Made by a program: the position numbers and the translations under genes | Part shown: one piece after another, positions 6,418 to 50,461 of the stretch | Layout: each line of letters opens with the position of its first letter | Position numbering within the stretch: the stretch's first letter is position 1 | The notes under the pieces: generated by a model | Seen by the model: the letters and a program-made list of their open reading frames with translations, nothing else | What the model was told of the DNA's origin: nothing | The model's database searches: none | NCBI RefSeq assembly: GCF_018977255.1 | Contig: NW_024704771.1 | Span: 3,720,001-3,784,000, forward strand | DNA from: Callorhinchus milii | Lineage: Eukaryota | Reading direction: 5' to 3' | Length of the DNA stretch: 64,000 nt

Positions 6418-9400
6418 ATGAACGGCCTGATGCTGCTCGCGGCGTGCGCCTCGCTCGGTATTGCAGGTCGGTGCTTTTAGTTTGATTAAACATCACGGTA
6501 CAAGTGGGGTTTTATTTCCCACCTTCTCTCTCTCTCTCTCTCTCTCAAAGACGGCGAGTTTTATAGCACGGCACACGGTTCGAGTTCCGTAAGCGTGGTG
6601 GTCAGCGCCCTAACCCCGCAAGCGAGAGGACCCGAGCTTGATTCCCGGGCGGCTTGAAACCTTGGGCAAGTCTCCTTACTCCACACAAAGACACGCCTCT
6701 GTTCTTACGCAGCAGTAAGTAGGGACTCAGGTGTTAGTCGATTGGCGGATCGCATTCCAGAGATAATAATTCCCTTCAAAAAAAAAATGCGGTGACTTAA
6801 TCCACAACTGTTTGTGGGACGCTGCTGTGCGCCGTGTTTCGCCCCCGAGATAGTCACAACACGTTCGAGTATATCCTGTGCAAAGTGCGTGAGGTTTGAA
6901 AGCTCTTAGAGACCTCTCAACCACATAATCAGGTGCCGTATCTAACGATAATCCTTGCTTTATTGTTAGACAATAACTATTATTATTATTTTATCATCTA
7001 ACAGAACGGCAGAACAGGCTCGTGGGGCTGAATGGCCTACTCCTGTTCCCATGTTCCCCGTGTTTCGAGCTGCAGTTGTTGAGCAACCGAGAGAAAGGCT
7101 TTGTTGAGTTTCTGTGCCCGTGCGTTTGCTGTTTCAGGAAGGGCCTTCGGGCTGAAGGTTACTCAGCCCGGGCAGAGCCTGGTGTTGCTGAGAGGGGACG
7201 CAGCCATGTTGCAGTGCTTCTTTGAGTACAGCGGGGGTCAGCCTGGACTGGCGTCGACCGTGTGGTACAGGGAGACGCCAAGCAAAAGCGAAATCAGCGA
7301 GACCAATGCTCTGTACTCTGGTCGGGTGATCAAACCCACAGCTCGGGACCTGGCACACGGGAGGAACGCCTCACTGACCCTCAGTAACGTCACGGTGCAG
7401 GACACCGGCGTCTATTACTGCACCGTCAAGGTCACGATCCCGGGAGAGGGCAGAATGGAGAATGGCACAGGCAACGGAACCCACTTACTGGTGAGAGGTG
7501 AGCGAGACTTGCTGGAGAGAGCCAGAGGGATGGGTGGGGTAGGGGAGGCGGGGGGAGGGGGGGGTGGGGGGGGAGGTGAAAGCCGGGGGAATGGGACAGC
7601 AGGAGATCACAAACTGCACAGATTGTCACGCTATTAACGACGATAACAAATAATAATAATAATCCTTGCATTTGAATTCTTATCACATCGTCGAGACGTC
7701 TCAAAGCGCTTCACAGAACATAAAGTGGAATGACTGTACACTCTGTGGGTGAAACGGCGTCACACAAACGGTCGTGGATTGAGTGACCAAATTATTATTA
7801 TTATTTGAAGGGATTATTAGGCGATTACAGTAAAACTCTCATAAGTCATATCAGTTGGGACCGTACATTGAATATGACTTTCGCAGAGTATGAGTTATGC
7901 GAAACTTATCAATAATATTTTTTTATCATTATTATATTATTATAATAGGAAATTCAATGGGACTTGGGCAGATGTGCAACTTAGGCGATACGATTTATAA
8001 CAGATCAGACTTGGGGTGAGTTTATCACTTTGGCAATCACCTAAATCGTGCTGCCCGAGTCTTGTTAAAGTTCCTGGTTGTTAGTCGATTGGCTGATCGT
8101 TTTTTCCGGGCGTATTAATCTGTTCCAAAAAAATAATAATGTGGTCGCTCAATCCGTGACTGTGTGTGGATCAGTAACTGCTGTGCGCAATTGGCTGCCG
8201 CGTTTTGCACGTACAATATACAGTCAATTCACTTTACGGTGTATTCCGCGCGATTGATTAGGTAATGAATTAAGTAAGTGATTAATTGAGAAGGAAAATG
8301 GAGAAAAGAGGGATTGAGGGAGAGCGTTGGGAGAGTTCCAGGGACTGGATTTAATAATAATAATAATAATAATAATCCTTGCATTTGATATAGCGCTTTT
8401 CACGTCGGAAGGACGTCCCAAAGCGCTTCACAGAACACACTGTAAAGTGAATTGACTGTAAATTTGTGGGCGAACGCGGCAGCCAATTGCGCACAGCAAT
8501 GTCCCACAAACAGTCGTAGATTGAAAATGCCAATTTTATTATTGTTTTTGGTTTTTTGGAGGGATTATTATTAGGCTCCGTGTGGAGTAAGGAAACTTGC
8601 CCAAGGTTTCGACCTGCCTGGAATTGAACTCAGGTCTCTCGCTTGCAAAGCGAGTGCTCTAACCACTGAGCTACAGGACTCCACGATTTGGTGCCAGAGT
8701 GCAACCTTTTGCTCTTTCCTTTGGCCCAGCTCCCCCGGCCCCTCCGAGGATATCAACAGAAACCCTGGGGTCGCAGGTTGTCAGTGTGACCTGCAAGACA
8801 TCTGGCTTCCACCCCAGAAACATCAGCCTGGTGTGGCTGCTGAACAACAGGTCAGTCACTGACAGTGGGACTACTGTCCTGACACAGGAACCCGACTCGA
8901 CCTACTCAGCTTCCAGCGTGTTCAACGTCACCCAGACTGGCCTTCGCCCTGATGTAAGCCCCCAGGCCATCTTCGCCCAGTGCCAAGTTCTCCACCAGAC
9001 CTTGCAAACTCCTTTGAGAAGTGAAAGGATTCAGCTGCGAGTTGCCCAACCCAGTGAGTAAACAACATCCCTCAGTTAGTCTGTACAGGGTTGAATCCCC
9101 GCATTAACCTCTGTCCCCCACCCCATCACCCCAGCCCTCGCCAGGCTCCACTGGCTCCCTCTCATTCGTCTCATCCTGCTTGTCCCTCATCCCCTCTGTT
9201 TCCATCATCAGTGGTCCCGGGTTGTCAGTGTGACTACTCTTTCAGTCACTACTCCCCGAAATCCTGGAACAATCTTCCTCTTCCTTGCCCCCTTCCTTCT
9301 CCATCTTCAGGTTGCGCTTGAAGACCTTCCCCTTCGACTGTGCCTACGGTCACCCTCCCCTGCCCTCTGGCATCAGGCTCTGCCACTGCCCAGTGGTCTG

Positions 9401-14897: not shown

Positions 14898-15805
14898 TTA
14901 TTTCTGGAGCGTGCCGACAGGTTTCTTTCTGAGCTGCCAGAGGTGGCCCTGGATTGTCAGGGCGTCCACGTTGGCAGACATTGTCTTGGAGGGGATGGGT
15001 TGGAACTGTTTGCGATCGGAGTTGTACTTGTACAGGTTCTCGATCATTTTCTTCTGGATGCTGCGTGGCCCTGAGCCGGCCAGTTTGTGGATCTCCTCCA
15101 TCTCGGGGCAATAGGAATAGAGGGCCCGGAACTGGCACTGGTGGTCACGGAACAGAATCACGCACTGGTTCAGCCCACACTTCTCCAGCTCCTGTAACAC
15201 CAACACACGATCAGATCAACGCCAACGCACAATCAGAGTAACACCAACACACAATCAGAGTAACACCAACACACAATCAGAGTAACACCAACACACAATC
15301 AGAGTAACACCAACACACAATCAACACCAACACACAATCAGATCAACACCAACACACAATCAGAGTAACACCAACACACAATCAGAGTAACACCAACACA
15401 CAATCAGCTCAATACTAACACCAACATACAATCAACTAACTCATCAACAACAACTCACTCACTCACTCACTCACTCACTCACTTACTCACTCACTCAACA
15501 GCTTACATTTACGCAGCACCTATCCCGTTGGGAGGACGTCTCAAAGCGCTTCACAGGGTTTGCTGTAAAGGGTTTTGTAGGCGAACGAGACAGCCACCAA
15601 GTGCACGAACAGCAGATCGTGTTCACGAGCTACACCTGAGGCAGAGCGGCAGCGGAGACTGTTTTGCTCAACCGAGTGTCTTGACACCCGCGGAAACTCA
15701 TCACCGTCACTTAAGAGTCTCCAAACCCCAACTGAGAATTCCAGGCATCCCACCTACACATGGACATCCCGGAGAGAGATTGTAGGAACAGAATGCGCTC
15801 CCCCC

Positions 15806-15842
<37 letters not shown>

Positions 15843-17531
15843 CCTGGAGGGACGCACCCTGCTGACCGAATTCCAGAGAGCATTAGGCGCAGGTTGGCAA
15901 GGGCTGAGATCTTGGAGAGCCCAGAGTGTGTGTTGGGGTAACTGCTGGAGTCTGACCAGCTACAACCATTGATATCGCTGTCACAGTGACTGCGTTGAGA
16001 GCTAGGCCACTCACTCACCTCGATCATGATGCTTCTCTGAGACTCATTAGCTTTGCCGGCCAGACAGCAGTGGTTCAAGGCGTTGTGCAGAATGAGCCGG
16101 TTGGATTTGGCGCTGGGCTCCTTAAACATCCGCAGACCTGGGCGACAGACCAGAGACAGTATGCACAGAGTCACGCAGCTCCCATTTGCACCGAGAGACT
16201 GCCTTGCACTTAAAAGCACCACAGCATCGACAACACTACCACCACCGGCGCACCCCTCAGACAGGATAGCCTCTCGGAGCTCACCGCACCAACGTTACGC
16301 TTAAAAGCGTCGCAGAAACGTCAGGCAGAGACGGATCACAAAGCTGCATTTAATAATAACAATCTTTGCACTTGAAAAAAGCGCCTTATCACGTTGCTGA
16401 GGCGCTTCACAGAATATCCTGTAAAGTACAGTGACCGTGTGATTTTGTGGGCGAAACACGACAGCCAATTGCGCACAGCAGTGTCCCACAAGCAGTTGTG
16501 GATTAAGCGACCGCATTTTTTCGGGGGTCTATTGCCCCCGGAAAGGGCTCCGTCAATGGACTAACAACCAGGTTCCTGATTACTGCTTGGTCAACAGAGG
16601 CGTGCGTGAAGTGGAGTAAAGGGAAGGTTTCGCACCGCCCGGGTGAACTCGCTTCACCATTATCCTCTCCCCCCCCCCCGTGCCCCCGTCCCAGCCTATA
16701 GCTCAGTGGTTAGACGTCCGCCAGACCTCCATGTGATTCTCGCGCAGGGCGAAATGTTGGGCAACTTACTCCACACACACGCACGCGCCTCTGTCTACCT
16801 GGCGGTAAGCAAGAACCGACTGTTAAGTCAATTGGCGGATCGTTTCTTCTGATGGCAATAATTCCTTCCCCACAAAAAAAGAATAATAATAAAATACTAA
16901 ATAATACTGATTAAAAACAAGTCAATCCACGACTGTTTTTGGGGGGGGGAAGCTGTTGTGCGCAATTGGCTGCCGAGTTTCGCCCACAGAATATGCAGTC
17001 ACCACACTTTACAGTATATTCTCTCAAGCGCTTCGAGACGTCTCGAAGATCTGAGGAGGGGCGCTGTGTCAAATGCAAGGATCATCATTATTATGATTAT
17101 TATCATTATTATAATTATTATAATTATTGTAATTATTGTAATTATTGTAATTATTATAATTATTATTATGAGTACTATGATTAATATGATTATTGTGATT
17201 ATTAGGGTTATTAGGATTATTATCCTCCTCCTCGGTGAACGGCCCAGGTACCTGGTGACTCTGTGGCTGGGTGTCTGTCCTTCTCCGCAGTGGGAGTATT
17301 GCTCAGGATCAGGGTCCTGGACATGGTGGACGCAGCCTCTGGCTGCTGCTCCCTGAATAAGCCACAAACAGAACCTTAACACAAGTTATTTTCTGCCCGA
17401 CCGGGTGTCTGACACACACACACACAAGAAAATCCATCGCCGTTGCTTAAGAGTCTCCAAACCCAACTGAGAATTCCATGGATCTCACCTCCATCTGGAA
17501 ATCCCAGAGATAAATTGTTGGAATGAATGTG

Positions 17532-17562
<31 letters not shown>

Positions 17563-20500
17563 GGGATGCATCCGGCTCACCTAATTCCAGAGAGTATTAG
17601 GCGCAGGTTGGCGAGAGCCCAGAGTGTGAGTTGGGGTAACTGCTGGGGTCTAACCAGCTGAAACCTCGGTGTCTGGTAGGGTTGGGGACTTCCTGCTCCT
17701 GCTCCTGCTTGCAGTGCGCACGCCATCCTGCAATTCCAACTTGGACAAGACATCTGTCCCCCATTCCACATCTGTCCACTCGCCACCCCCACACCCCATA
17801 GGAGCAGGAGGAAACCATTCAGCCCTTCGAGCCTGTTCCACCATGCAATTACATCATGGCTGATCTGCACCTCAACTCCGATCACCCGCGTCCTGATTCC
17901 TAACTGGCCTCAGCTCCAATTTGAAGGTGATTCCCCCCTTGTTCTGGATTCCAGCGCCTTGGGACGTCCTCCCGACGTGAAAGGCGCTCAATAAATGGAA
18001 TCTTGTTGTTGTTGTTGTTGTTGGATTCCCCCCCCCACACACACACACACCAGAGGATATGGTTTCTCTGTAGCTAACGGCAATACTTACTCGTCTGCCG
18101 GGAATCCATCCTCACAGACCTGGGTGTGTGGAATTGTTCCTGTTAATAAGAGAATAACTCTGGTTCGCAGCCCACCATAATGGCCACAACACATCACATT
18201 CACACAGCGCCTTTCACGTCAGGAGGACCTCCCAAGGCGCCGGATTTGGACCCGAGCTGAGGGGTGGGATCAGGAGGGGTGGGTGGAGGGCGGGGAGGGT
18301 AGGGGCAGGAGGGTCGACCGAAGGTGTCGTCGAAGTGGAGAGTCTTGAGAACGTGACTTGAAGGAGGCAAGGGAGGGAAGCGAGGAGAAGGGACTGTCTG
18401 ATTCACAGTCACTACACTTTACAGCATATTCCGTGAAACGCTTTGAGAGCCAACAACGTGATAAGGCAAGGATTCCTATTATATTCTGCGTTTCAGACCA
18501 ATTTTTCTCTTGAAGATCTTATTGTCATCATGTATTATTATCATAAGAATTATTATTGTTATTAAACTTGTGACCCATTCCCACGAACCCCTCATGGAAA
18601 GGGCCGGTCTGTGTCGCCACCTCGTGATCAGGGAGAGAATAGCCTCTCAGCGTAAAGCAAGAATCTTTCTTCCAGCATTTATCAGATCTAAAACACCTTA
18701 AAACTCTCCCGAGCCTCTGACTGTCGGCTGTAGGCAGAACGCAGCAGCACAACAATGTCTTGCAAACCTCTCTTGTGGCGTGATTTAGCGTCCGACCGAA
18801 CAGGCACAGATATTTATCATTGATATTAATAATAATCTTAAGTAACGATCATTCGACATCGAACCTCGTCACATCCCATCGTTGAAACGTCTCAAAGCGC
18901 TTCACAGAATCCACTGTAAAGTGCAGGGACTGTGCATTTGTAGATAATAACATAGCGTATATTTCACACAGCACCTTATCAAAGCGCCGCACCTACTGTA
19001 TGTATATTGTAAAGTGTAGTGACTGTGTCTTTTGGGGGGCAGAACGCAGCAGACGTGGATTGAGTGACCAAATTTATCTGGGGGGTGGTTTTCGGCCAGG
19101 ACACTGGGAGGAATTCCCTTCTCTTTATGAATAGCGCCGTGGGATCTTTAAAGGTCCAACTGGACAGACAGACGCTCAATTTAATGTCCCGTCCGAAGGA
19201 CGACACCTCCAAACAATGCAACGATCTCTAACATCTTTTAACTGATGTGAGTCTTGAGCCCTGGTGATGTGATTGAGAGACCAGTGTTACTGACCGACAT
19301 AAATAAATGATAATAATGACACTTGCATTTGATATAGCGCTTTACCACATCATTGAGACGCCTCAAAGCGCTTCGCAGGATGTACTATGATGGCCCATCG
19401 TGCGCAGCAGTGTCCCACAAACGGTGAGGGAGTTACTTTGGGGGACAGGGAGAGAGAGAGAGAGAGTAACTCCCTTCTCTTTTCCAATAGCATCTTTAAT
19501 ATCCGCCTGAACAGGGAGACAGGCTGCGCGTCTCGTCCGAATGACGGCACTTCTGACGATGCAACACCCCCCCCAGTGCTGCGTTGGAGCATCAGCTTAG
19601 ACTAAGAGATTCCGAGTCCCGATGTGGGGGCTCGAACCCACAACCTTCCGACTCGGAGACGAGAGACGAGAGAGAGAGAGAGAGAGAGAGACCGACTGAG
19701 CCAGGCCGAGACGTTGTGACCCAGACTCTGTGGCTTTGCGGTGACTGGGTTACTCACTTGCTTTCAGTCCGGACTTGGACAGTCCTGAGTCGGTGCCCGG
19801 CCTCTGACGCACGACCACAGCCTCCTCCTTCCTGAGCCGGATCTCTCTGGCTCTCCGTCTGCTCACAGAGGGAGCAGAGATAACCGGGGCCGGGGTGGGG
19901 AGGGGGGGAGAGAGATAATAAGTCACCGATCATGGGGAGGGAGATAGAGGGTGGGAGAGCAGAAGGGGTAGGGGTAGGAAGGGAGAGAACAGGTGGGGAA
20001 GAGGAGGGTAGGGGGGGAAAAGGAGGGGCAGGGGGAGAGGAGGGGTAGGGGGAGAGGACGGGTAGGGGGGAGAGATGGGTTACAGGGGGAGGGGTGGGGT
20101 AGTGGGGGGAGAGCAGAGGTAGGGAGGGGAGAGGAGGGATGGGGGCGAGAGTAGGGGTAATGGGGAGAGGAGGGGTATGGGGGAAATGAGGAGGGGTAAC
20201 GAGATGGGGGGAGAGGATGGGCAATGGGATGGGGGAAGAGGATGGGTAATAGGATGGGAGAGAGGAGGGATAGGGGGAAAAACAACAACAGGATTACGTT
20301 TGTATAGCGCCTTTCACGTCAGGAGGACGTCCCAAGGCGCTGGACAGTGTACAGCATTGCAGACCCGAGCTGGGGTTGGGGGGGGGGAGAAGGGCAGGGA
20401 GGGGAAGGGGGTGGTCGACGGCATGGTCGAAGAGGAGGGTCTTGAGGTGGGACTTGAAGGAGGCTAAGGAGGGGGCGAGACAGAGTGACTGGGGGTTGGA

Positions 20501-23500
20501 ATTCCAGAGGTTGGGGGCAGAGTGACTGAAGGCTCTCCCGCCAATGGTGGGGCGGGTGGGTCGGGGGACGAGGAGCAATGTTACGGAGGTGAGGGAAGGC
20601 AGAGCGGGTCATGGCTTGGATGTGGGTGCTTGGATCATTCAGAACTCATTCAGAACTCTGCAGCTCGTGTACTGTCCCGCACTAGGCTTCGCGACCACAT
20701 CACTCCCACCCTCGCTCCCCTCCACTGGCTCCCCATCCCCCAGAGGATTGATTTCAAGATCCTCATCCTCACCTACAAGGCCATTCACGGCCTCGCTCCC
20801 TCCTACCTCTCCAACCTACTATCCCCCTACCTACCTGCCCGTACCCTCCATTCCTCCGGCTCCGGTCTGCTCCACGTCCCCCGCCCCAACCGCCCTACCA
20901 TCGGTGGCCGGGCCTTCAGCCTCTCAGCCCCGAGGCTCTGGAACTCCATCCCCCAGTGCCTTCGCCGCTTCCTCCCTTTCCTCCTTCAAGGCCGGTCTCA
21001 AGACCTTTCTCTTTGACCGAGCATTCAGGTCCCCTCTCGACTCTTCCCCCTTCTCGCTCCCTCCCTCCCCTCCCCTCACCCTGACCATTTCCCCCCTCCT
21101 CGCTCCCTCCCTTCCCTCCCCTCACCCTGACCATTTCCCCCCTCCTCGCTCCCTCCCTTCCCTCCCCTCACCCTGACCATTTCCCCCCTCCTCGCTCCCT
21201 CCCTTCCCTCCCCTCACCCTGACCATTTCCCCCCACTGCTCGGGTCATGACCCAACTGTGCAGCGCCTCGGGACGTCCTCCTGACGTGAAAGGCGCTTTA
21301 TAAATGGAATCTTGTTGTTGTTGTTGTTGTTGTGGGGGAGAAAAGACAGTTGAGGATCGAACAAGACACCCGGGTTCCTGATGGCTGGTGAGTTGTGGTG
21401 AGCAACCATGGAGGGTGACGCTGCCAGAGCCTGAGGTGCTGAGGCACTGGCGTGAGCCGATCGGGAGGGCCTCAGTCTTGTTCACGTTCAACTGTAGGAA
21501 ATTTGCCCTCATCCAGGACTTGATGTCCCACCGCAGTCTGTCAGGACAGCAGTGCTCCTGGAGTTGAGGGTGGAGGCAGAACGATAGAGTTGGGTGTCAT
21601 CCGCATACGTGTGGAAGTTGACCCCATGTCTGCGGGTGATGTCAATGGGGAGGCTGTAGACATCAAAGAGGAGAGGGCCAAGGACAGAGCCCTGGGGGAC
21701 GCCAGACATGACAGTGCGGGGGCTGGAGGAGAAACCGTTAGAGGCAATGGAGGGGATGGGGGGGGGGGGGAGGACTCACCGAGCCTGTTCCCGCTGGCGT
21801 TCCTGGTCGCTCTCTTGCTGTTCCCGCCGGAGCCTGGCCCCCTCGCTCCGCTGCTGCTGCTTGAGGATGAAGAGCGCTCGTCTGTGTGCTACCGTGTCCT
21901 GGCGACAGAGGCAGCAATGGTTACAGCACCTGCCCACCACCCCCCCCCCCCCACCCCACAACCCCATCACACAGGCCCTCTCCACCCCCAACCCCCTACG
22001 TCACACAGGCCCTGCGCCCCCACCCTCATTCCTGTCCCCGCTCCCCAACTCTCTGTCATTCCCGGCTCAAGCCATTCACCCAACGCACACTCCCCCCCCC
22101 AAAGCCTTGGCCCTTGCCAACCTGTGCCTAATACTGTCCGGAATTAGGGGTAAGCAGGGCGCGTCCCTCCAGGGGGGGAGAGAGAGAGAGAGAGAGAGAG
22201 AGGGAGACAATCTAGCGCTGGGATTTCCGGGTGTGGGTGGGATCCATGGAATTCTCAGCTCGGTTTGGAGACCCTTAAGCGACGGTGTCGGGGTCCGGTG
22301 CGCGTCAGACACCCGGCTGACCCCGAACACGTTTCAAAGCGCTTCGCGGGCTGCACTGTAAAGTGGAGTGACTGTACGTCTTGTGGGGGAAAGGGGCCCA
22401 ATTGCGCACAGCAAACAGTCGTGGATTGAGTGACCAATTTTTTTGGGGGGAAGGGGTTAGTAACCCCAGAAAGCGATCTGTCAATCGACTAACAACCGTG
22501 TTCCCATTTACCGCTGTGCGTGTGCGGGTGTGTGGGTGTGTGTGTGTGTGGTGTTTGTGGTGTCTATGTGGTGTGTGTGTGATGTGTGTCTGTTGGGTGT
22601 GTGTAGTGTTTGTGGTGTGTGTGTTATGGTGTGTGTGTGTGTGTGTGTGTGCACACGCGTGTGTGGTGTGTGCCTGTGGTGTGTATGGTGTGTGCATGGT
22701 GTGTTTGTGGTGTGTGTGATGTGTGTGTGTGCNNNNNNNNNNNNNNNNNNNNNNNNNNNNNNNNNNNNNNNNNNNNNNNNNNNNNNNNNNNNNNNNNNNN
22801 NNNNNNNNNNNNNNNNNNNNNNNNNNNNNNNNNNNNNNNNNNNNNNNNNNNNNNNNNNNNNNNNNNNNNNNNNNNNNNNNNNNNNNNNNNNNNNNNNNNN
22901 NNNNNNNNNNNNNNNNNNNNNNNNNNNNGTGTCGAGTGCTCGAATCACTGCGCCACAGGACTCCACAGAGTCAGGTGGTCCGAGTTTGGACGGTCTCTCA
23001 CCGCGGCTGCGCTTGGTGTTGGTTTGGGGGTCTCCCGTCCCCCGGGGTCTGGTCGGAGCTCGGGGGACCCCCGGCTCAGCCCCTCCAGCTCCGACTGCAC
23101 CACATTCAGGCTCCGGTTCAACTCCTCCAAACCGGCCCCCTCCCCCGCTTCGGGGTCGCCCCGGGCCTCGCTCCGCAGCCCCCACTCCGGCCACACCCGG
23201 TGCCCGTTTGCGGGGGGCTCGCCGGGAACCTCCCTGTCCTCCCGGCCCCCCTCCGCAGCCCCAGCCAGCAGAGCAAACGCCTCCTGCCCCAGCCTCTGCC
23301 TGTGGCTGGCGGCCATTTCCTCCACGGCCCGGATCTGAGCCAGGATCTCCCTGCGCTTGGCCTCCAGCCGCCTGCGGAGCCCCGTCTGCTCCTCCGTCTC
23401 CCCGGGGCCCGGCTCCTCCGCTCCCGCCGGGGCCCCCAGCGCTGGGGCAGGGCAGGGGTGCCGTTTGCCCCGCCCCTTCCGGAACCTTCTCTCGGCGAAG

Positions 23501-25473
23501 CTGGTCATCTGGACCCCGTTGGCCGGTGGACACTGCGAGGGGTCAGCGCCGGCCTCTCCGCCCCCCCCCTCCCCATCCCCATCCCCCTCCCCCTCCCCCC
23601 GGCTCGGGCCCCGGCCTCCCTTCCGGATGATGTAGCTGTGTTGACGGCTGATTGGCTTCTTCCGGCCGGGCGGGGCGTCCGCAGGCTCCTCCCCCTCAGA
23701 ATTCCCAGAATTCCCGTCGTTCCCGGGATTCAGGACGTTCCCAGAACGCTCGACGGCCCCGGAATTCTCGACGGCCCCTGAGTTCTCGACGGCCCCGGAA
23801 TTCTCGACGGTTCCGGAATTCCCGACGGCCCCGGAGTTCCCGACGGTCCCGGAATTCTCGACGGCCCCGGAGTTCCCAACGGCCCCGGAGTTCCCGACGG
23901 TCCCGGAATTCTCGACGACCCCGGAATTCCCGACGGCCCCGGAATTCCCGACGGCCCCGGAGTTCCCGACGGCCCCGGAGTTCCCGACGGTCCAGGAATT
24001 CTCGACGGTCCCGGAATTCCCGACGTTCCCAGAACAGGAGTCCAGCCCCGCCCTCGTGGCGTCCCACCCCAGACAGCTCAGGCCGTGGCCATGGCCCCCG
24101 ATGATGGGCAGACCCGTGGCTCTGGCACTCTCTGGCGTGTGTGGCCGGTCAGACAGGATGTAGCTGTTGCGGAGCAGGTGGCCGGCCCGCGGTTTCGCCG
24201 GGAGCCGCGTCCCCTCAGCGTCGCCGCCGCCCTCCCGTCTCCGAACCCGCTCCGTCTCCCTCCTCCCGGCTCCCCCCAGCTCAGCGGGAGCCTCGCCCGG
24301 CTCCGACACAACCGTCTCAGGAGGGAATCGCGAGGACGGACAGGCGTCGGGGAGCGCTGATGGACTCTTCGTCTCTTCCTGAATGGGCTTCATTGCAGAG
24401 GTGGTCCTCCCAACTACAACTACAACAACAGCAGCAACTTCATCATCATCGATATCATCATCATCAACAACTTCATCATCATCATCAACATCAGCAACAA
24501 CAACATCAGCAACTTCATCATCATCATCATCAGCCTCATCAACATCAACAACAACAACATCATCATCATCAACATCATCATCATCAACATCAGCAACAAC
24601 AACATCATCAACAACATCATCAACATCATCATCATCAGCAACAACAACAACAACAACATCATCGTCAACACACACACACACACGCTCTTTGTTTCCCCTG
24701 GACGCAATCGAGTGCGCGCAAAATGCCCAGTCACTTCACTTTACAGTCTGTTCTGTGAAGCACTTTGAGACGTGATGATCAAATGCGGATTAATATTATT
24801 ATTATTTATTTCACACCTTTCACGTCGGGAGGATGTCCCGAAGCGCTGGACAGTCAGGGATTGCCCCCCCGCCCCCCCCCCCCCCCCCCCGAGCTGGGGG
24901 TTGGGATCAGGCGGGACAGGGGAAGTGTGGGGGTAGGAGGGTGACCGAAGGCGCGGTTGGAGAGGAAGCTGTTGAGATGGGCTTCGGAAGGAGACGAGGG
25001 CGGGGGGCGGGGGGGGGGGGGGAGAGAGAGAGGAGGGCGACATGGCGCAGGCTGGAGCCCGCTGAGCGGAGGTCACGGAGGTAGGGACGGGCAAGGTCAT
25101 GGTGGACTTCCAAAGCAATCGGAGGATGTCGAATGGGAAGCGTTTCCACGCGAGTCTTGACTGCACGGGGTGGGGCGGGGGGTGGGGAGGGAGGGAGAGG
25201 GTGAGGTTGGGGTGGGGGGGACCAACGGTTAATCTTGGCCTCTCCTCCTCACCTTCATCTTCGCTCCTCGCCTTCTCGTCCTCCTCGTCGGGACAGCGGG
25301 AATCCCAGCCCTCCTCGGGGGAGCGACTGGAAAGGGGCTCAGAGCCGGGAAGATGGGGAACACGGTGGCCCTGGTCGCTCATCGTGGGGTCAAACTTACA
25401 GTTGGGGCTGTTCGGAGCAGCTGTAGTGACGGGGAGAAGATTTCAAAGGGAGTCGGGAGTTTTCTCTGTCGCG

Positions 25474-25504
<31 letters not shown>

Positions 25505-25952
25505 TTTCTCTCGCTCTCTCGCTCTCGTTCCCTCTCTCTCTCACGTTTTCCCTCTCGCTCTCACTCTCTCTCACGCTCTCTCTCTCTCTCACACTTTCTC
25601 TCGCTCTCTCTCTCTCTCTCGCTCACTCTCGCGCTCTGTCTCTCTCTCACGTTTTCCCTCTCGCTCTCACTCTCTCTCACGCGCTCTCTCTCTCGCGCTC
25701 TCTCTCTCTCTCGTGCGCTCTCTCACTCGTTCTTTTTTGCTCGCTCTCTCTTCTTCACTTTTGCTCGCTCTCGCTCGTTTTCTCTCTCTTTCTCTCTCTC
25801 TCTCTCTCGCTCCCTCTCGCGCTCCCTCTCTCTCGCTCTCTCTCTCACGCTCTCTCTCTCTCTCTCTCTCGTGCGCTCTCTCACTCGTCCTTTTTTGCTC
25901 GCTCTCTCTTCTTCACTATTGCTCGCTCTCGCTCGTTTTCTGTCTCTCCCTT

Positions 25953-25992
<40 letters not shown>

Positions 25993-26104
25993 CAACTCGA
26001 CCCCACAATATGTTTATTTCCCTTCCCACGAAAAGCAGCTCATTAACTGGAGCCATGTGACGGCCCAGTGACCGCCCGTCGGCGCCTGAACACAATGGCT
26101 CCAT
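14898..26104 (-). CDS. CAMSAP: CAMSAP/Patronin family microtubule minus-end protein (coiled coils + CKK domain), paralog unresolved, apparently lacking the CH domain
   Basis: Phase-consistent exons: 26104(ATG)-26002, 25420-25253, 24413-23002 (MTSFAERR; [11 protein letters not shown]...[10 protein letters not shown]; [12 protein letters not shown]), 21898-21780 ([18 protein letters not shown]), 19858-19758, 18139-18091, 17352-17252, 16137-16019 ([28 protein letters not shown]), 15191-14898 ([13 protein letters not shown]...[10 protein letters not shown]...[18 protein letters not shown]; CKK). Together 2466 nt, about 821 aa. The 3' six exons are firm; the start and the two 5' exons are tentative. 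Minus-strand AATAAA at 13421-13416. Confidence 0.85.
15195..15430. repeat. 22-bp minisatellite next to the last CAMSAP acceptor
   Basis: Unit ACACAATCAGAGTAACACCAAC, about 9-10 copies, some degenerate. Confidence 0.9.
19300..19715 (-). mobile_element. HE1-like (shark V-SINE type) SINE
   Basis: Minus-strand tRNA head (GCTCAGTCGG...TCGGAAGGTTGTGGGTTCGAG), HE1-like core (GTGCCGTCATTCGGACGAGACG; GAAAAGAGAAGGGAGTT) and L2-type tail. Related pieces at about 9800-10090 and 53595-53710. Confidence 0.65.
20627..21330 (+). mobile_element. L2 3' fragment nested in an oppositely oriented L2
   Basis: [57 protein letters not shown] with a (TTG)n tail. Flanked by TGTGGG at 20621-20626 and 21331-21336. The host L2 (-) spans about 20300-21700. 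Confidence 0.85.
22733..22928. other. Assembly gap within a CAMSAP intron
   Basis: 196 N next to a (GT)n-rich tract; a small exon could be hidden here. Confidence 0.99.
23752..24021 (-). repeat. In-frame 18-bp coding repeat (15x [G/E]NSG[A/T/V]V) in the large CAMSAP exon
   Basis: 15 units of about GGGAATTCCGGGGCCGTC, bounded by GACGTTCCCAGAAC direct repeats at 23734-23747 and 24022-24035 (+ strand). Confidence 0.92.
24414..24670. repeat. (CAA/CAT)n trinucleotide microsatellite
   Basis: Imperfect CAA/CAT/CAG tract directly next to the 24413 acceptor. Confidence 0.9.
25475..25992. repeat. (CT)n-rich low-complexity tract
   Basis: CT/CG dinucleotide runs with internal duplications. Confidence 0.9.
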
Positions 26105-27076
26105 TCTTAAAATCCTCTCAAGTCGACGGCAACACGTCTCTGCTGACTGTCTCTGCTCTGGAAAGCGTTCAAAATGTATCGTCCCCCCCCCCCCCCCCCC
26201 CCCCCACCCACCCCGGCTTCCCCTGCTCTCCCAGCCCATCCCCCCCCCCAAGAGCGGAGAGACTCCGAGTTCCTCGAGTTGCGGAGTCCAGCAGCTCAGG
26301 GGTTAAAGCGCTCGCCTGGCGAGCGAGAAGACTCGGGGTTCGATTCCCGGGCGGGTCGGGTCGGGTCAGGGCGAAACCTCGGACAAGTTTCCTTACTCCA
26401 CACACACACACACCCACACACACACCCACACACACACACACACACCACACACACGCCTCTGTTTACCCGGCAGTTGTCAGTCGATGGGCAGATCGCTTTC
26501 CGGGGTAATTATCCCCCAAATAAAATCGGTCGCTCACTGTTTTTTGGGGTGTTGTGCGCAAACTGACTGCTGCGTTTCGCCCACAAAATACAAATTTAAT
26601 TCGCCTGACATATATTCTAAGACGCCTCAACAACGAGGCGATGTGTCAAAGCGTCATCATTGTTATCTGCTCCACCCTCCGGGACTCCATCCCGCAGTCC
26701 CTTCAACGTGGCTGTGGGATGGAGTTCCACCTCCCTCCCCCTCGACCCCTCCCTCGTCTCCTACAAGGACCATCTCGCAACCCTCCTCCTCGACCGCGCC
26801 TTCAGCCACCCTCCTACTCCCCACCTCCCCCGCCCTCCGCCCCTCCTAATCCCAACCCCCAGCTCGGGTCCAAATCCCTGTCCGTCCAGCGGCTTGGGAA
26901 GTCCCTTCGTGCCCTCGCACCTCTCTCTCTGATTTTCTTACGCCCCCGCTCCTAAAGACCTTCCTTTTTGATGGTGCTCGTGGTCACTTGCCCCCCACCA
27001 TCCTCCCTCCCTCCCTCCCTCCCTCCCCCCGGCTCGGGGTCAGACTCCATCACTGCAAAGCGCTCCAGGACACTAC

Positions 27077-27284
27077 CCTGAGTGAGGGACGCTGTGCAAA
27101 TGCAATGTCTCGTCGTCGTTGCTCCCGTTTCCAGTCGCCCACAGATTGGAAGCTGCTTCTTCTGACCTATCCCCAAGTTATTCAGACTCACCAGCCTCGA
27201 TCTCGGGGGTTTAGACCCTCTTCGTCCGCAGTCCCTGAATTAAAGGCTCCCGAGCAGTTCAGCTACAAACGCCAGGAAAATGAG
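27077..27284 (-). pseudogene. Degenerate CAMSAP CH-domain-end exon with in-frame stop
   Basis: Phase-0 acceptor followed by LIFLAFVAELLGSL*, in the same register as CAMSAP1 PNVMVFIAELF. TAA at 27242-27240; a PRD motif appears in a shifted frame. Candidate donors at 27191 and 27076. Confidence 0.5.
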
Positions 27285-33756: not shown

Positions 33757-36700
33757 TCATGCTTTGATGGGGGCCTTGTTCTGTACTTTCTGGAAGTCCT
33801 GCTGTAGTTTGGCGAGGGTCTCTCTGTGTTGCTCGGACTTCTTCTCTAGGTCTTTCATCTGGGTCTCGTATCGCTTTCTGCAGGAGACGGGAAGTGTGAG
33901 AAAGAACGTAACATCATAATAATCCCTGCATTCGAGACACTGGATAGGGGATTGACTGTATATTTGTGGGCGAAACGCGGCAGCCAATTGCGCACGGCAG
34001 AGTCCCACAAACAGTCGCGGATTGAAGTGACCAAATTATTATTATTATTTTTTTGAAGGATTATTATCCCCGATGAAGTGATCCGCCAATCGACTAACAA
34101 GCGGGTTCCTACTTGCTGCTGGGTAAGCAGAGGCGTGTGGAGTAAGGAAAGTTGCCCAACATTTTGCCCTGACGGGAATCGAACCCCAGGTGTCTCGCTT
34201 GCGAGGCGAGTGCTCCAAAACACTGAGCTACAGGATTCCTTAAAAATTTGCTGGACGAAAGACCAAGGTCCATTTAGTTCGCCTTCCCTCATCCCAGCAG
34301 TTGCATGACATCAACGGATATGGGGCAAATGTGGGTAAAATGGAGTTGAGGTACAGATCAGCGATGAATGGTGGAACAGGCTCGAGGGGCCGAATGGCCT
34401 CCTCCTGTGATTCGAGGACCCACAGACTTGGGGGCTGGTGGGGGTGGTGGGGGGTATGTGAAGTGTGACTCACATCTCTCCGTTGATGTAATCCAATCGC
34501 TTTGTGACGGTGGACTTCGCCTCTTCTAGATCCTGTTTGACAAGGACTGGGCCAATCAGCTTGAAGACGGTGTTCGATGACTCCAACAGGTTCAACTCCT
34601 GAGGGAGGGAGGGAGGGAGGGAGTGAGGGGGAAACGGAGAGAGGGAGAGAGAGAGAAAAAAAAGACAGAAAGCACAGGTACAGAGAAATCAACACAGAGC
34701 TGACGGCAGGATCAACTTCAGGGCCTTCACTCCCCAGCACCTCCCTACATACCCCATCCTCCGCCCACCTCAATCCCTCCACCTGGTCCCCTCTTTATCC
34801 ATCTTTAAATCCGAGTGACCGACAGTGTCCTGGCCAACGATCCCCCCCAAATAAAATCGGTCACTCGTTTCACGGCTGTTTGTGAGACGCTGCTGTGCGC
34901 AATTGTCCTGCCGTGTTCGCCTACAAATACAGTCACTGTGTTCAAAGCAATTCCCGTTGAGATGTTCTTCCTTCCACTTGACGCCTTATTGCGTCGTTGA
35001 GGCGTCTCAAAGCGCTTCACGGAATGTATTATAAAGTGGAATGACCGTTAGATCGCAGCAGCCAATTACGCGCAGCAGTGAACCGCACAGTCGTGGACTG
35101 AGTGTGACCACATTTTTTTTAAAAGGGAAAGTGATCCGCCAATCGACTGACAACCGGGTTCCTACGTATCACCAGGTAAACGGAGGCGCGTGGAGGATGG
35201 AAACTTGCCGAAGGTTTCGCCCTCTCCGAGAATCGAACCCGGGTCCTCTCACTTGCAACACGAGAGCGCTAACCGCTACGCAAAGGTTATTATTATTAGT
35301 TTTCTGAAACAATAGGGACATGGGACAGGTGTCAGGAAAACCTAAGTGATTTTCCTGTATCCGGAATACATATACGTCTGTTTTCCTATATTAAGAATTG
35401 GACAAACGCCATGACATCTCCCTTCACACTAAACGTTTTGTTGCCCTGGCAACTAACAAACTTTTTTTGCTGAGATTTTCTGCTCAAAGCGCTTAACAGA
35501 ATACACTGTAAAGTGAATTGACTGTATACTTTGTGGGCAAAACGCAGCAGCCAATTGCATGGATTGAGTGACCAATTTTTTTGGGGGGGGAAAGTGAAAT
35601 TGCTTTCCGGAGGAGGCAATAATCCTTTCAAAAAAAAAATAATAACTTGGTCACTCACTCCACGATTGCTTGCGAGACATTTGCTGCTGCGTTTCGCCGA
35701 CAAAATACACAGTCACTACACTTCACAGTATATTCTATCAAGTGCTTTGAAATGTCTTGATAAGGCACTATATCATCCGCTAATTCACTAATAACTGTGT
35801 TCCTACTTACTGCTGGGTAAACAGAGTGCGGAGTAAGGAAACTTGCCTAGAGTTTCGCCCTGCCCTGCCCAGGAGTCGAACCCTCATCCTCCCGCTTGCG
35901 AGGCGAGAGCACTAGACCCTACGCTACGGGACTCGATATATCAAATGCAAGGATAATTATTGTTACAGAAATCATCGTTGGGAGCCTTACCTCTTTAACT
36001 ATTGTATTTTCAGTCACCTGCGCTTCCAGCTTCTGTCTCGCCGAGAGACATTTGCTGAGATCTGCGAGAGGAAAGGACAGTGTTAAATAAGTACCAGACG
36101 TGATACGGATGTGAAACAATATATATATATATTCCTGTTTGACCTTGATTCCTAATTCTTCAAATTCAGGCATTTCAAATAAAATCCTGGAAAATTTGAC
36201 AGTGATTTTATTTGAAACCTTCGCGATTCATGGCAGTCACTTTTTTTTTTCCTAACTCAAATATGTTGCTGAGGGAGAGGGGCAGGGAAGTCTACATGGA
36301 GTTGAAGTGCTTCCTAAGGTGACTGGCAACAGCATGTGTGGATCAAGCCAGCCCTCTGCGACAGTGTCTAGTCTGGTTCCTGAGCCAGTATGCCAGGACA
36401 CTGTTGATGACGGCACGGCCGGGCCTGGCTCATCGGCAGCGCCTGCGAGGGCAGACCGGTCCCTGGGGGCCGGGAATCCTCCGACTCAGCTCCTGTTAAC
36501 ATTGCAGCCAAAGCCCTGACAGGTAGGGTGGTCCCAGCTGGACAAGCAGCGGGAAAGCTTGCCAGACAGTGATATCAATGGCAAGCTATGTGGTTTTAGC
36601 TGGTTAGTCTCCAGCAGTTACGCCAACTCTGGGGTCCCCAAGCCTTGGCTCTTGCCAACCTGCGCCTAATGCTCTCCAGAATTACGTCAGTTGGGTGCCT

Positions 36701-37374
36701 CCCTCCAGGGAGTGTGTGCACATTCTATTCCAAAAATCTATCTCTGGGATTTTCACATGTTGGTGGGATGGATACATGGAAATCTCAGCTTGTTTTGGAG
36801 ACTTTTAAACACGTGCGTCAGACACCCGGCTGACCAAAAAACAGAGAGATCTTGCAACTGCTCCGTATCTCCAGCAGTTTCTGATCACAATCATGTCATG
36901 CAATGAGCTATGATACCCGGAAATGTTTACAGGGCAGTGGTTTAACCTGGGGTTTGGGTTATAAACTGATCTTTGTGTACTAGTGACTCTAGAAACATGT
37001 GAACAGGAGGAGGCCATTCAGCTCCTCGAGCCTGTTCCGCTATTCTTTTAGATCATGGCTGATCTGTACCTCAACACCAAATACCTACCTTTACCCTACA
37101 TCGCTTGGTAATCTGACCTAACAAACATCTCTCTCCCTCAGTCTTGAAAGTGTGAATGGATCCAACCATAATCCACAGCCTTTTGGGGGAAGAGAGTTCT
37201 AGATTTCCACTACCATTTGGGTGAAAAACTGCCTCCTGATTTCACTCGTAAATGGCTTAGTTCTAATTTTAAGATAATGTCTCTTTCCTCTGGATTCTTC
37301 CCACTGACCAGAGGAAATAGTTTCTCTGTATCTACCCTATCAAATCCCTGTATCATTTTAAACACTTCAATTAG

Positions 37375-37408
<34 letters not shown>

Positions 37409-39010: not shown

Positions 39011-39043
39011 GTTGCCAGGAACCGGAAATAGACAGAGAGCACA

Positions 39044-39284
39044 GTGTCCAATCACAGCCCCGCTCCCCCTCCAGTCAGTGACCAATCACAGCCCGGCTCC
39101 CCCTCCAGTCAGTGACCAATCACAGCCCAGCTCCCCCTCCTGTCAGTGACCAATCACAGCCCGGCTCCCCCTCCTGTCAGTGACCAATCACAGCCCGGCT
39201 CCCCCTCCTGTCAGCGTCCAATCACAGCCCGGCTCCTCCTCCTCCTGTCAGCGTCCAATCACAGCCGCTCCTCCCTCCTGTCAG
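39044..39284. promoter_or_regulatory. 7x tandem 34-bp CCAAT/GC-box array immediately upstream of PFDN6
   Basis: Unit about GTGACCAATCACAGCCCGGCTCCCCCTCCTGTCA; CCAAT at 39048, 39082, 39116, 39150, 39184, 39218 and 39255. Starts about 35 nt upstream of the PFDN6 ATG. Confidence 0.8.

Positions 39285-41424: not shown

Positions 41425-50461
<9,037 letters not shown>

What the first reader, a model, noticed from the sequence alone, without database searches (positions are those of the whole stretch)
14898..27284. Candidate fourth CAMSAP ohnolog on the MHC paralogon
Seen: a CAMSAP gene with a clear CKK domain between the NCR3-like gene and PFDN6. Known: human CAMSAP1 (9q34), CAMSAP2 (1q32) and CAMSAP3 (19p13) lie on chromosomes carrying MHC paralogons, with none at 6p21. 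Inference: this is the missing fourth 2R copy, retained in this lineage. It is short (about 821 aa versus roughly 1250-1600 aa) and divergent outside the CKK domain and coiled coils.
Basis: partly seen in the sequence, partly recalled or inferred. Interest (0 to 1): 0.7.

Follow-up and report, generated by a model that had tools for sequence, protein, structure and literature searches.

The report
Fourth CAMSAP paralogue beside MHC genes
The window holds an intact but shortened gene of the CAMSAP family (proteins that cap microtubule minus ends) belonging to a little-noticed fourth branch found so far only in sharks and rays, sitting among MHC-region genes, which fits (but does not yet prove) a leftover copy from the two ancient vertebrate genome duplications.

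Summary
There is a real CAMSAP-family gene on the minus strand. Homology supports five exons (24393..23002, 21898..21780, 17352..17252, 16137..16019, 15191..14898). All introns are GT-AG and the ORF is 674 aa, with CC1, a CC3-like coil and a complete CKK domain. No CH or N-terminal CAMSAP domain exists anywhere in the window.

The assembly gap (22733-22928) lies in an intron. An in-frame stop precedes it and a (CA)n repeat plus a SINE follow it. Exon phases on both sides match those of the orthologues.

The CKK groups (100/99) with seven elasmobranch proteins labelled "uncharacterized" or "CAMSAP3-like". It lies outside bony-vertebrate CAMSAP1 and CAMSAP3, and outside a CAMSAP2 clade that includes catshark. 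It shares 7 of 7 clade-specific residues and the same exon phases. CKK dN/dS is 0.1-0.2.

Neighbours are PFDN6 and a B3GALT gene here, and WDR46 in two stingrays, which is 6p21-type synteny.

The ohnolog reading is therefore plausible, but three points are open. AU tests cannot resolve the sister group. Chondrichthyan CAMSAP1 and CAMSAP3 could not be retrieved. RPL7A (human 9q34) also lies here.

Verdict: partly supported; moderate interest.

The parts
14898..15191 (-). Last exon (294 nt including stop TAA at 14900-14898): C-terminal two thirds of the CKK domain
   Evidence: Pfam CAMSAP_CKK E 2.5e-33. PDB CAMSAP1 CKK E 3.6e-38. Acceptor ttacag|GAG. Same length and phase as in basking shark, Narcine, Hypanus and Hemitrygon.
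16019..16137 (-). Penultimate exon (119 nt, phase 1): N-terminal third of the CKK domain, including the N1492-equivalent Asn
   Evidence: Pfam CKK E 1.8e-11. PDB alignment to CAMSAP1 chain 6qus_I residues 37-73. Splice sites. Same length and phase as the orthologues.
17252..17352 (-). Small linker exon (101 nt, phase 2 to 1) ending ...HPATESP|G, equivalent to the orthologues' exon ending ...PPAE(Q/P)T|G
   Evidence: Strong acceptor ttctgtttgtggcttattcag|g and donor CAG|GTACCT. Phases are identical to shark exon 12 and the rays' 86-107 nt exon. The sequence similarity itself is weak, so this is inferred.
21780..21898 (-). Coiled-coil (CC3-like) exon, 119 nt, phase 0 to 2
   Evidence: tblastn hits from 29 CAMSAPs, best E 7.7e-7. 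Aligns to basking-shark exon 9 of identical length and phase. Splice sites.
22733..22928 (.). Assembly gap, inside the intron between the large exon and the coil exon
   Evidence: An in-frame stop at 22947-22945 and the donor at 23001 precede it. A (CA)n repeat at 22515-22731 and a SINE follow it.
23002..24393 (-). Large exon (464 codons from the first in-frame ATG). Clear homology to the orthologues from about 24210 downward. The true 5' end or upstream splice is unknown (a possible acceptor cag| at 24379).
   Evidence: tblastn against basking shark residues 645-946, E 1.7e-28, 34.5% identity. ORF and splice model.
23272..23382 (-). CC1 conserved region ([17 protein letters not shown]...); the family's LEEK motif reads LEAK here
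   Evidence: Pfam CAMSAP_CC1 at 34 bits, cutoff 27. Motif as defined in PMC4016758.
23704..24025 (-). Coding minisatellite, 18 nt x 17.9 copies = hexapeptide [12 protein letters not shown] repeats in the disordered linker
   Evidence: TRF score 399. Basking shark has a different 14-aa repeat at the same place.
24394..27284 (-).
   Evidence: No tblastn, HMM or Pfam signal. Repeats.
33760..39085 (-). PFDN6 (4 coding exons), upstream neighbour on the same strand; it bounds the CAMSAP gene
   Evidence: Exon translations. Pfam Prefoldin_2. PDB 'Prefoldin subunit 6' E 1.9e-12.
7083..9058 (+). NKp30 (NCR3)-like V-set exon with a J-like motif, plus a C1-set exon; downstream neighbour
   Evidence: Pfam V-set 9.1e-10 and C1-set 1.1e-10. 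Translation.
43546..48658 (-). RPL7A with intronic SNORD24 and SNORD36 copies (synteny context; a 9q34 gene in human)
   Evidence: PDB eL8/L7a E 1.6e-27. Pfam Ribosomal_L7Ae. Rfam SNORD36 and SNORD24.
62719..63893 (+). B3GALT-family gene (B3GALT4-like by position) with a frame break (synteny context)
   Evidence: Pfam Galactosyl_T positions 2-75 lie in one frame and 74-193 in another.

Best explanation
SHOWN. The window carries an intact five-exon, 674-codon gene of the CAMSAP/Patronin family. It encodes a disordered, repeat-rich N-terminal half, the CC1 region, a CC3-like coiled coil and a complete CKK domain. It has no calponin-homology or N-terminal CAMSAP domain. It is the orthologue of a set of elasmobranch genes that form a fourth vertebrate CAMSAP clade ('CAMSAP4'). 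That clade is distinct from CAMSAP2 (including shark CAMSAP2) and from bony-vertebrate CAMSAP1 and CAMSAP3. The gene sits among MHC-region (6p21-type) genes.

INFERRED (origin). This is most likely the fourth copy from the 1R/2R duplications of a proto-MHC CAMSAP gene. It was kept in cartilaginous fishes and lost in bony vertebrates, and it evolved fast. Its N-terminal domain is extremely diverged in sharks and not detectable in rays or here.

INFERRED (mechanism). The protein binds microtubule minus ends through its CKK domain, wedged between protofilaments at the intradimer site as in CAMSAP1-3. The residues that set affinity (R1528 and R1535 equivalents) and end-selectivity (N1492 equivalent) are kept, and the domain is under purifying selection. 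The coils probably mediate self-association or partner binding. Spectrin or calmodulin binding through CC1 is doubtful, because LEEK reads LEAK and the basic calmodulin-site residues are lost. Without the CH module it would act as a pared-down minus-end binder, possibly tissue-restricted.
For: Gene and domains.

The exon count, lengths (119, 119 and 294 nt) and phases are identical to the orthologues in basking shark, Narcine, Hypanus and Hemitrygon.

Clade: WIN plus 7 elasmobranch proteins has support 100/99, and WIN is sister to them at 91/79. CAMSAP2 including two catsharks has 96/95, and CAMSAP3 has 100/97. The quick tree of 116 representatives gives the same clade at 99. All 7 clade-specific CKK residues are shared by the window.

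Orthologue names and taxa.

Selection: CKK dN/dS is 0.12-0.21 against shark and rays. It is 0.33 over 127 hand-picked conserved codons of the large and coil exons.

Key residues: N1492, R1528 and R1535 were mapped through PDB chain 6qus_I and are conserved (residue roles from PMC6868217).

Synteny: PFDN6 and a B3GALT gene in the window. WDR46 (BING4CT) lies tail-to-tail with the orthologue in Hypanus and Hemitrygon.

No bony-vertebrate member was found among the 150 best representatives of 1.84 billion proteins. The topology (CAMSAP2, CAMSAP3) versus (CAMSAP1, clade 4, cyclostomes) is of the symmetric kind that two rounds of duplication predict.
Against: The CKK alone cannot resolve the sister group: all four placements pass the AU test.

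The N-terminal tree is dominated by a 1.7 substitutions-per-site stem and by long-branch attraction to tunicates.

No chondrichthyan CAMSAP1 or CAMSAP3 could be retrieved. The claim of an 'extra copy' is therefore shown only relative to CAMSAP2.

Clade 4 is nearest to CAMSAP1 in both the CKK and the N-terminus. A bona fide RPL7A (human 9q34, like CAMSAP1) lies beside PFDN6. This is what a moved 9q34-type segment could also look like.

Synteny in sharks proper was not seen, because there are no called genes in the 10-kb flanks of the basking-shark locus.

The 5' end, transcription and microtubule binding are untested. The window's gene product is not present in the protein collections searched.
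Confidence: 0.55

Rival explanations
1. Lineage-specific duplicate. A copy of CAMSAP1 (or of another paralogue) arose in the chondrichthyan stem, landed in the MHC-linked region, and then diverged quickly. It would be younger than 2R and not an ohnolog.
For: Clade 4 falls in the group with CAMSAP1 (86/84), and the C4+CAMSAP1 clade costs only 0.09 lnL. The shark N-terminal domain scores best against CAMSAP1, at 99.8-106 bits versus 65.9-93.6 for CAMSAP2 and CAMSAP3. The long stem branches (0.48 for the CKK, 1.7 for the N-terminus) show acceleration that could mimic age. The clade is known only from cartilaginous fishes.
Against: It needs a chance insertion into exactly the one paralogon that lacks a CAMSAP. 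The introns are retained with family-typical phases, so it is not a retrocopy. CKK identity to CAMSAP1 (66-67%) is lower than between CAMSAP1 and CAMSAP2 or between CAMSAP1 and the cyclostome proteins (72-75%).
Confidence: 0.2
2. Relocated orthologue. Clade 4 is simply the chondrichthyan CAMSAP1 (or CAMSAP3) orthologue, moved next to PFDN6 (perhaps together with RPL7A) and evolving fast. There would be no fourth gene.
For: No chondrichthyan CAMSAP1 or CAMSAP3 was seen in any output. RPL7A, which shares 9q34 with CAMSAP1 in human (own knowledge), lies in the same window. The tree position next to bony CAMSAP1 is what orthology would give.
Against: The failure to see the sequences is a limit of the listings, which show only the top 120 or 150 hits and cluster at 50%. 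It is not evidence of absence. CAMSAP1's CKK is nearly invariant across bony vertebrates (terminal branches 0-0.12) and catshark CAMSAP2 is ordinary, so a 0.48 stem plus loss of the CH domain in an only copy would be extraordinary. PFDN6 lies between RPL7A and the CAMSAP gene, so this is not a clean block. NCBI's '-like' or 'uncharacterized' names for these proteins hint that other CAMSAP genes hold the orthologue names, which is weak evidence.
Confidence: 0.1
3. Decaying relic. In this species the gene is an N-terminally truncated, unexpressed remnant whose open frame is a short-term survival.
For: No N-terminal domain was found. No protein for it is in the collections. The gene is packed with microsatellites, SINEs and an RT fragment. 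LEEK reads LEAK in CC1. A neighbouring B3GALT gene has a frame break.
Against: The ORF is an uninterrupted 674 codons with four canonical GT-AG introns. CKK dN/dS is 0.12-0.21 with dS above 1. All three functionally tested CKK residues are kept. Rays have the same N-terminally short architecture in annotated genes.
Confidence: 0.07

Closest known systems
Elasmobranch 'uncharacterized protein' / 'CAMSAP3-like' genes: Cetorhinus maximus LOC144695486 (XP_078422491), Carcharodon carcharias LOC121291862, Pristiophorus japonicus, Narcine bancroftii XP_069771717, Hemitrygon akajei XP_072890948, Hypanus sabinus XP_059818369, Mobula birostris
   Same: One clade with the window (100/99). They share 7 of 7 signature residues. 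The last exons are identical in length and phase. They share the CC1 and 'RNSYI..RPHT.ESA.A.GLPI' blocks. Each has a lineage-specific peptide repeat at the same place. WDR46 is a neighbour in two rays.
   Different: The window is only 64-74% identical in the CKK and branches outside all seven. Sharks keep a highly diverged N-terminal CAMSAP domain (7 extra 5' exons) and two extra small exons. The window and the rays show neither.
CAMSAP1 (human 9q34.3; minus-end tracker)
   Same: Nearest classical paralogue in the CKK (about 66-71%) and in the sharks' N-terminal domain. The CKK residues N1492, R1528 and R1535 are conserved. CC1 and a CC3-like coil are present.
   Different: The window gene has no CH domain and is 674 aa versus about 1600 aa. 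The CC1 spectrin motif LEEK reads LEAK and the basic calmodulin site is lost. The genomic neighbourhood is different. The evolutionary rate is far higher.
CAMSAP3 / CAMSAP2 (human 19p13.2 / 1q32; minus-end decorators and stabilisers)
   Same: CKK fold (E 2.8e-33 to the CAMSAP3 CKK structure). The window shares 'KYNSDRK' and 'TIQGHLWQ' with mouse CAMSAP3. NCBI labels two orthologues 'CAMSAP3-like'.
   Different: CAMSAP2 and CAMSAP3 group together without clade 4 (95/80). Catshark CAMSAP2 is inside CAMSAP2. No similarity was found outside CC1, the coil and the CKK, so an MBD-type lattice-binding region is not evident.
Other MHC-paralogon gene families with members on 1, 6, 9 and 19 (e.g. NOTCH, BRD, PBX, RXR; from own knowledge, not tested)
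   Same: CAMSAP1/2/3 lie on 9q34, 1q32 and 19p13. A member beside PFDN6, WDR46 and B3GALT would complete the 1-6-9-19 pattern.
   Different: For those families the fourth member survives in mammals and the 2R topology is documented. Here the fourth member is chondrichthyan-only and its age is unresolved.

Membership tests
CAMSAP/Patronin family | C-terminal CKK domain (PF08683) | tested here: met
   Two exons cover model positions 2-119 (E 1.8e-11 and 2.5e-33). PDB CKK hits reach E 3.6e-38.
CAMSAP/Patronin family | [quoted passage not shown] | tested here: not met
   No CH or N-terminal match anywhere in the 64 kb by tblastn with about 90 CAMSAPs or by an HMM of the shark orthologues' N-terminus. 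Shark orthologues keep only PF25532, weakly, and not PF11971. Rays keep none. So the protein is CAMSAP-derived but does not have the full family architecture.
CAMSAP/Patronin family | CC1 conserved region with the LEEK(R) motif | tested here: met
   PF17095 at 34 bits against a cutoff of 27. The motif reads LEAKR in the window and LEEKR in basking shark. Spectrin and calmodulin binding cannot be assumed.
CAMSAP/Patronin family | CC3 / pre-CKK coiled coil | tested here: inconclusive
   The 119-nt exon matches 29 CAMSAPs weakly (best E 7.7e-7). The assignment to CC3 is by position only.
CAMSAP/Patronin family | Binds microtubule minus ends | not testable with these tools
   There is only indirect support: the N1492, R1528 and R1535 equivalents are conserved and dN/dS is 0.12-0.21.
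Elasmobranch fourth CAMSAP clade ('CAMSAP4') | Monophyly with the seven elasmobranch proteins, excluding CAMSAP1-3 | tested here: met
   Support is 100/99 in the careful tree and 99 in the 116-row tree.
Elasmobranch fourth CAMSAP clade ('CAMSAP4') | Clade-specific CKK residues and shared exon architecture | tested here: met
   All 7 diagnostic columns are shared. The phases 0/2/1/0 and the 119- and 294-nt CKK exons are as in the rays and sharks.
2R ohnolog on the MHC paralogon | Lies in the 6p21-type paralogon (the MHC proper) | tested here: met
   PFDN6 is adjacent and a B3GALT gene lies 35 kb away. WDR46 is adjacent in two stingrays. Caveats: no class I or class II gene is in the window, and RPL7A (9q34 in human) is also present.
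2R ohnolog on the MHC paralogon | The duplication node predates the chondrichthyan-osteichthyan split | tested here: inconclusive
   Clade 4 lies outside the CAMSAP2 clade that includes catshark, and outside bony CAMSAP1 and CAMSAP3. However, no chondrichthyan CAMSAP1 or CAMSAP3 is in the tree, and the AU tests reject nothing.
2R ohnolog on the MHC paralogon | CAMSAP1, 2 and 3 all present elsewhere in the same genome | not testable with these tools
   No vertebrate genome collection is available. Only Scyliorhinus CAMSAP2 was found.

The most novel reading that the evidence does not exclude
A fourth vertebrate CAMSAP ohnolog ('CAMSAP4'), the 2R partner of CAMSAP1, survives only in cartilaginous fishes. 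It lies inside the MHC region next to PFDN6 and WDR46. This would mean the proto-MHC carried a CAMSAP gene, and it would complete the 1-6-9-19 set for this family. The gene has been reduced during evolution to a CH-less protein built around CC1, a coil and the CKK domain. RPL7A beside it may be a second case of reciprocal ohnolog retention between cartilaginous and bony vertebrates.
Probability: 0.5. Interest if true: 0.6.

Novelty: new member of a known kind. Interest (0 to 1): 0.5.

Why it matters
The CAMSAP family is textbook-described as three genes in vertebrates. A fourth, cartilaginous-fish-only branch appears in databases only under automatic names ('uncharacterized', 'CAMSAP3-like'). 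It does not appear in any paper I could find in the library.

If it is a 2R copy, it adds a clean four-member family to the MHC paralogon. It would also give a dated marker for differential gene loss between cartilaginous and bony vertebrates.

For cell biology, it offers a naturally minimised minus-end protein: the CKK is kept under selection while the CH domain is diverged or lost. That could show what the CKK and the coils can do alone.

It is not a new kind of system, and the origin claim still hangs on one missing comparison.

Tried and rejected
1. Searching the 5.8-billion-protein collection with the large exon failed. Low-complexity words swamped the candidate list and gave one irrelevant hit.

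2. I tried several routes to chondrichthyan CAMSAP1 and CAMSAP3. These were CKK-region searches with basking-shark and Hypanus proteins, name look-ups of 30 representatives, and contig look-ups of short CAMSAP1-like fragments. They gave only teleost, Logan or metagenome sources. Only catshark CAMSAP2 turned up.

3. Literature and supplement searches for shark CAMSAPs or a CAMSAP-MHC link found nothing usable. The 'CAMSAP4' text hits were a citation superscript and unrelated acronyms.

4. The N-terminal-domain tree was rejected as uninformative. It has a 1.7 substitutions-per-site stem and a long-branch join with tunicates, and the careful search did not finish.

5. I looked for shark exons 10-11 and for the 'PPAEQT' motif in the window. 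They are absent. Rays lack them too, and skipping them keeps the frame.

6. I looked for PFDN6, RPL7A, B3GALT and Ig genes in the flanks of the elasmobranch loci and for WDR46 in the window and other loci. Only the two stingrays show WDR46. There is a weak possible exon in the Narcine flank.

7. The species of the window could not be named. No single-exon complete protein was available for an exact look-up, and I did not type spliced sequences into calls.

8. I did not include them, because there is no homology and no transcript evidence.

Full report
1. WHAT IS THERE

The window is vertebrate genomic DNA with four assembly gaps. On the minus strand, stop-to-stop translation shows a CKK domain split over two exons and a 596-codon ORF.

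Pfam gives CAMSAP_CKK on both exons: E 2.5e-33 for model positions 36-119, and E 1.8e-11 for positions 2-41. It gives CAMSAP_CC1 in the long ORF at 34 bits, above the curated cutoff of 27. The last exon matches the solved CKK domains of CAMSAP1 (E 3.6e-38) and CAMSAP3 (E 2.8e-33). This is far beyond chance.

2. GENE MODEL

tblastn with about 90 full-length CAMSAPs hits only four places: 14901-15215, 15848-16294, 21779-21904 and 22951-24398. No CH domain is hit anywhere in the 64 kb.

I mapped the basking-shark orthologue exactly onto its locus. It has 14 exons. The last six measure 119, 95, 55, 116, 119 and 294 nt, and they follow a 2104-nt large exon.

The window has the same 119-nt coil exon (21898..21780, phase 0 to 2). 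It also has the same 119-nt (16137..16019, phase 1) and 294-nt (15191..14898) CKK exons.

Between the coil exon and the CKK exons I found a 101-nt exon (17352..17252). It has a strong acceptor. It has the phases of shark exon 12. It has a similar ending, HPATESP|G against PPAEQT|G.

Shark exons 10-11 are absent from the sawshark and ray proteins. The ray genes have exactly the five-exon C-terminal layout that I infer here: large exon; then 110-113 nt; then 86-107 nt; then 119-122 nt; then 294 nt, with phases 0/2/1/0.

Joined from the first in-frame ATG (24393), the model is 2025 nt, or 674 codons. It has one terminal stop and four GT-AG introns.

Clear similarity to the orthologues starts near 24210, at '[27 protein letters not shown]'. 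The alignment to basking shark residues 645-946 has E 1.7e-28.

3. THE GAP

The large exon ends at a consensus donor, GCG|GTGAGA (23002|23001). If the donor is ignored, the frame stops at 22947-22945, before the gap at 22733-22928. Beyond the gap come a (CA)n-like tract (22515-22731) and a SINE.

The orthologues have no exon between the large exon and the coil exon. Their large exons also end in phase 0. The gap is therefore intronic under every reading I could construct.

4. THE 5' END

Nothing between 24394 and PFDN6 (whose 3' end is near 33760) resembles any CAMSAP or any orthologue.

An HMM of the sharks' conserved 310-aa N-terminal domain finds every shark exon (E down to 7e-47). It finds nothing in the window (best E 0.84) and nothing in the three ray loci, including the 40-kb Hemitrygon gene and 10 kb upstream of each.

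The interval is largely (GAT/GTT)n, (TC)n, SINE pieces and other repeats. I therefore treat 24394-27284 as unsupported. An upstream non-homologous exon splicing at cag|24379 cannot be excluded without RNA data.

5. RELATIVES

A scan of 1.84 billion representative proteins with the last exon gave 405 hits, and the best was only 69% identical.

In a tree of 116 CKK domains the window falls in a 5-row clade with support 99. Its members are elasmobranch proteins:
- Cetorhinus ('uncharacterized LOC144695486', 1306 aa)
- Pristiophorus ('CAMSAP3-like', 1174 aa)
- Narcine (1061 aa)
- Hemitrygon (728 aa)
- Hypanus (560 aa)

Carcharodon and Mobula were added later.

A careful tree of 47 labelled CKKs gave these results:
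- window plus 7 elasmobranchs: 100/99
- window sister to all seven: 91/79
- CAMSAP2 including two Scyliorhinus proteins: 96/95
- CAMSAP3: 100/97
- bony CAMSAP1: 88/93
- (CAMSAP2, CAMSAP3): 95/80
- clade 4 with CAMSAP1 and the cyclostome proteins: 86/84

Seven alignment columns are fixed in the elasmobranch clade and differ from the consensus of each of CAMSAP1, CAMSAP2 and CAMSAP3. The window has the clade state at all seven. A 90-aa fragment of unknown species (P0029) also carries the signature.

6. WHAT THE TREE CANNOT SAY

AU tests on the CKK do not reject clade 4 as sister of CAMSAP1 (p 0.50), CAMSAP2 (0.21) or CAMSAP3 (0.22), nor as lying outside all three (0.14).

The sharks' N-terminal domain aligns to the whole CAMSAP N-terminal/CH region at only 22-27% identity. 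It scores best against CAMSAP1. Its tree has a 1.7 substitutions-per-site stem that joins the tunicates, which is a long-branch artefact.

I could not obtain a chondrichthyan CAMSAP1 or CAMSAP3. The listings are capped and clustered, and every look-up led to teleost or anonymous sources.

7. SYNTENY

Upstream on the same strand lies PFDN6. Its four exons were read directly. Pfam gives Prefoldin_2, and the PDB gives 'Prefoldin subunit 6' at E 1.9e-12.

At 62.7-63.9 kb lies a B3GALT-family gene. Downstream are an NKp30-like V/C1 gene and another V/C1 pair.

In Hypanus and in Hemitrygon the orthologue lies tail-to-tail with a WD40+BING4CT gene, which is WDR46. From my own knowledge, WDR46, PFDN6 and B3GALT4 are adjacent in the human extended class II region. 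So the clade is MHC-linked in at least two distant chondrichthyan lineages.

Against a purely 6p21-like picture, a genuine RPL7A lies between PFDN6 and the B3GALT gene. It is multi-exon and hosts SNORD24 and SNORD36 as in human. From my own knowledge, human RPL7A is at 9q34, the paralogon of CAMSAP1. This could mean reciprocal retention of ohnologs. It could equally mean that 9q34-type material moved here. I cannot tell which.

8. IS IT FUNCTIONAL, AND HOW WOULD IT WORK

CKK dN/dS against basking shark, Narcine and Hypanus is 0.12, 0.21 and 0.19. dS is 1.1-1.5, which is saturated, so these values are approximate. Over 127 conserved codons of the large and coil exons dN/dS is 0.33, though these blocks were picked for conservation.

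I mapped residues through PDB chain 6qus_I, where chain residue i corresponds to residue 1439+i, given the 1474-1613 construct stated in PMC6868217. The Asn whose mutation (N1492A) lowers minus-end selectivity is conserved. So are the two loop-3 arginines (R1528, R1535) that give affinity.

The most likely mechanism is therefore CKK-mediated recognition of microtubule minus ends, as in CAMSAP1-3. Helical CC1 and CC3-like segments and a long disordered linker accompany the CKK. The linker carries an 18-copy hexapeptide minisatellite here, and a different 14-aa repeat sits at the same place in basking shark.

CC1's LEEK motif, required for spectrin binding in CAMSAP1, reads LEAK. The basic residues of the predicted calmodulin site are gone. 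Those interactions should not be assumed. Whether the protein tracks, decorates or stabilises minus ends is not predictable from sequence.

9. COMPARISON AND NOVELTY

By descent this is a CAMSAP. By the family's architectural definition (CH plus CKK, PMC4016758) the window's protein fails one defining feature. It is best described as a CH-less CAMSAP derivative.

The clade exists in public databases only under automatic names, and I found no paper describing it. It is a new member, in effect a new paralogue branch, of a known family and not a new kind of system.

10. VERDICT

Distinctness, breadth in elasmobranchs, MHC linkage and purifying selection are shown. A 2R age and the 'extra copy' status relative to CAMSAP1 and CAMSAP3 are not yet shown.

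Noticed in passing
window 42345-48658 (-): A genuine multi-exon RPL7A lies directly next to PFDN6. It hosts intronic SNORD24 (46694-46772) and four SNORD36 copies (48584-48658, 43805-43879, 43169-43241, 42345-42417). In human RPL7A is in the Surfeit locus at 9q34 and PFDN6 is at 6p21. This may be reciprocal ohnolog retention or a rearrangement.
   Followed up: partly
window 62719-63893 (+): The B3GALT-family (B3GALT4-like by position) coding sequence is split between two reading frames at Pfam Galactosyl_T position 74/75, with the overlap at 63285-63390. This could be a frameshift, a sequencing error or a pseudogene.
   Followed up: partly
window 986-2023 (-) and 7083-9058 (+): There are two immunoglobulin-superfamily V-set + C1-set exon pairs. 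The plus-strand V exon ends in a J-like [10 protein letters not shown] motif (NKp30/NCR3-like). The minus-strand pair looks like a B7-type or tapasin-type V-C1.
   Followed up: partly
window 23704-24025 (-); L001 about 35700-36400: A coding minisatellite sits inside the large CAMSAP exon: 18 nt x 17.9 copies, giving [12 protein letters not shown]. Basking shark has an unrelated 14-aa repeat (GQGAQEDPELLGTS, more than 20 copies) at the equivalent place. These are independent repeat expansions in the same linker.
   Followed up: partly
window 15194-15407, 24411-24670, 25463-25992, 27975-28470: The gene is dense with tandem repeats. A 22-nt unit x10 abuts the last acceptor site. A (GAT/GTT)n tract reads as D/V runs just 5' of the first homologous codons. 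A 530-bp (TC)n tract follows. A 22-nt unit x22 lies further upstream.
   Followed up: no
window 21512-21775 (-), 5100-5417: A reverse-transcriptase fragment (RVT_1, E 2.5e-7) lies in the CAMSAP intron. A transposable-element ORF at 5100-5417 recurs many times in all four elasmobranch loci at 50-68% amino-acid identity. About ten tRNA-like Rfam hits are tRNA-derived SINE heads.
   Followed up: no
P0029 (90 aa, species unknown): A CKK fragment in the representative library carries the clade-4 signature residues. It is only 62-63% identical to the window and to the sawshark. It may be a further lineage with this gene, but its source could not be looked up.
   Followed up: partly
L001 10001-31573; L002-L004: Shark orthologues keep seven 5' exons. 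These encode a conserved but extremely diverged CAMSAP N-terminal/CH-like domain (stem branch 1.7 substitutions per site). The ray loci show no trace of it, so the N-terminal module was apparently lost at least once within the clade.
   Followed up: partly
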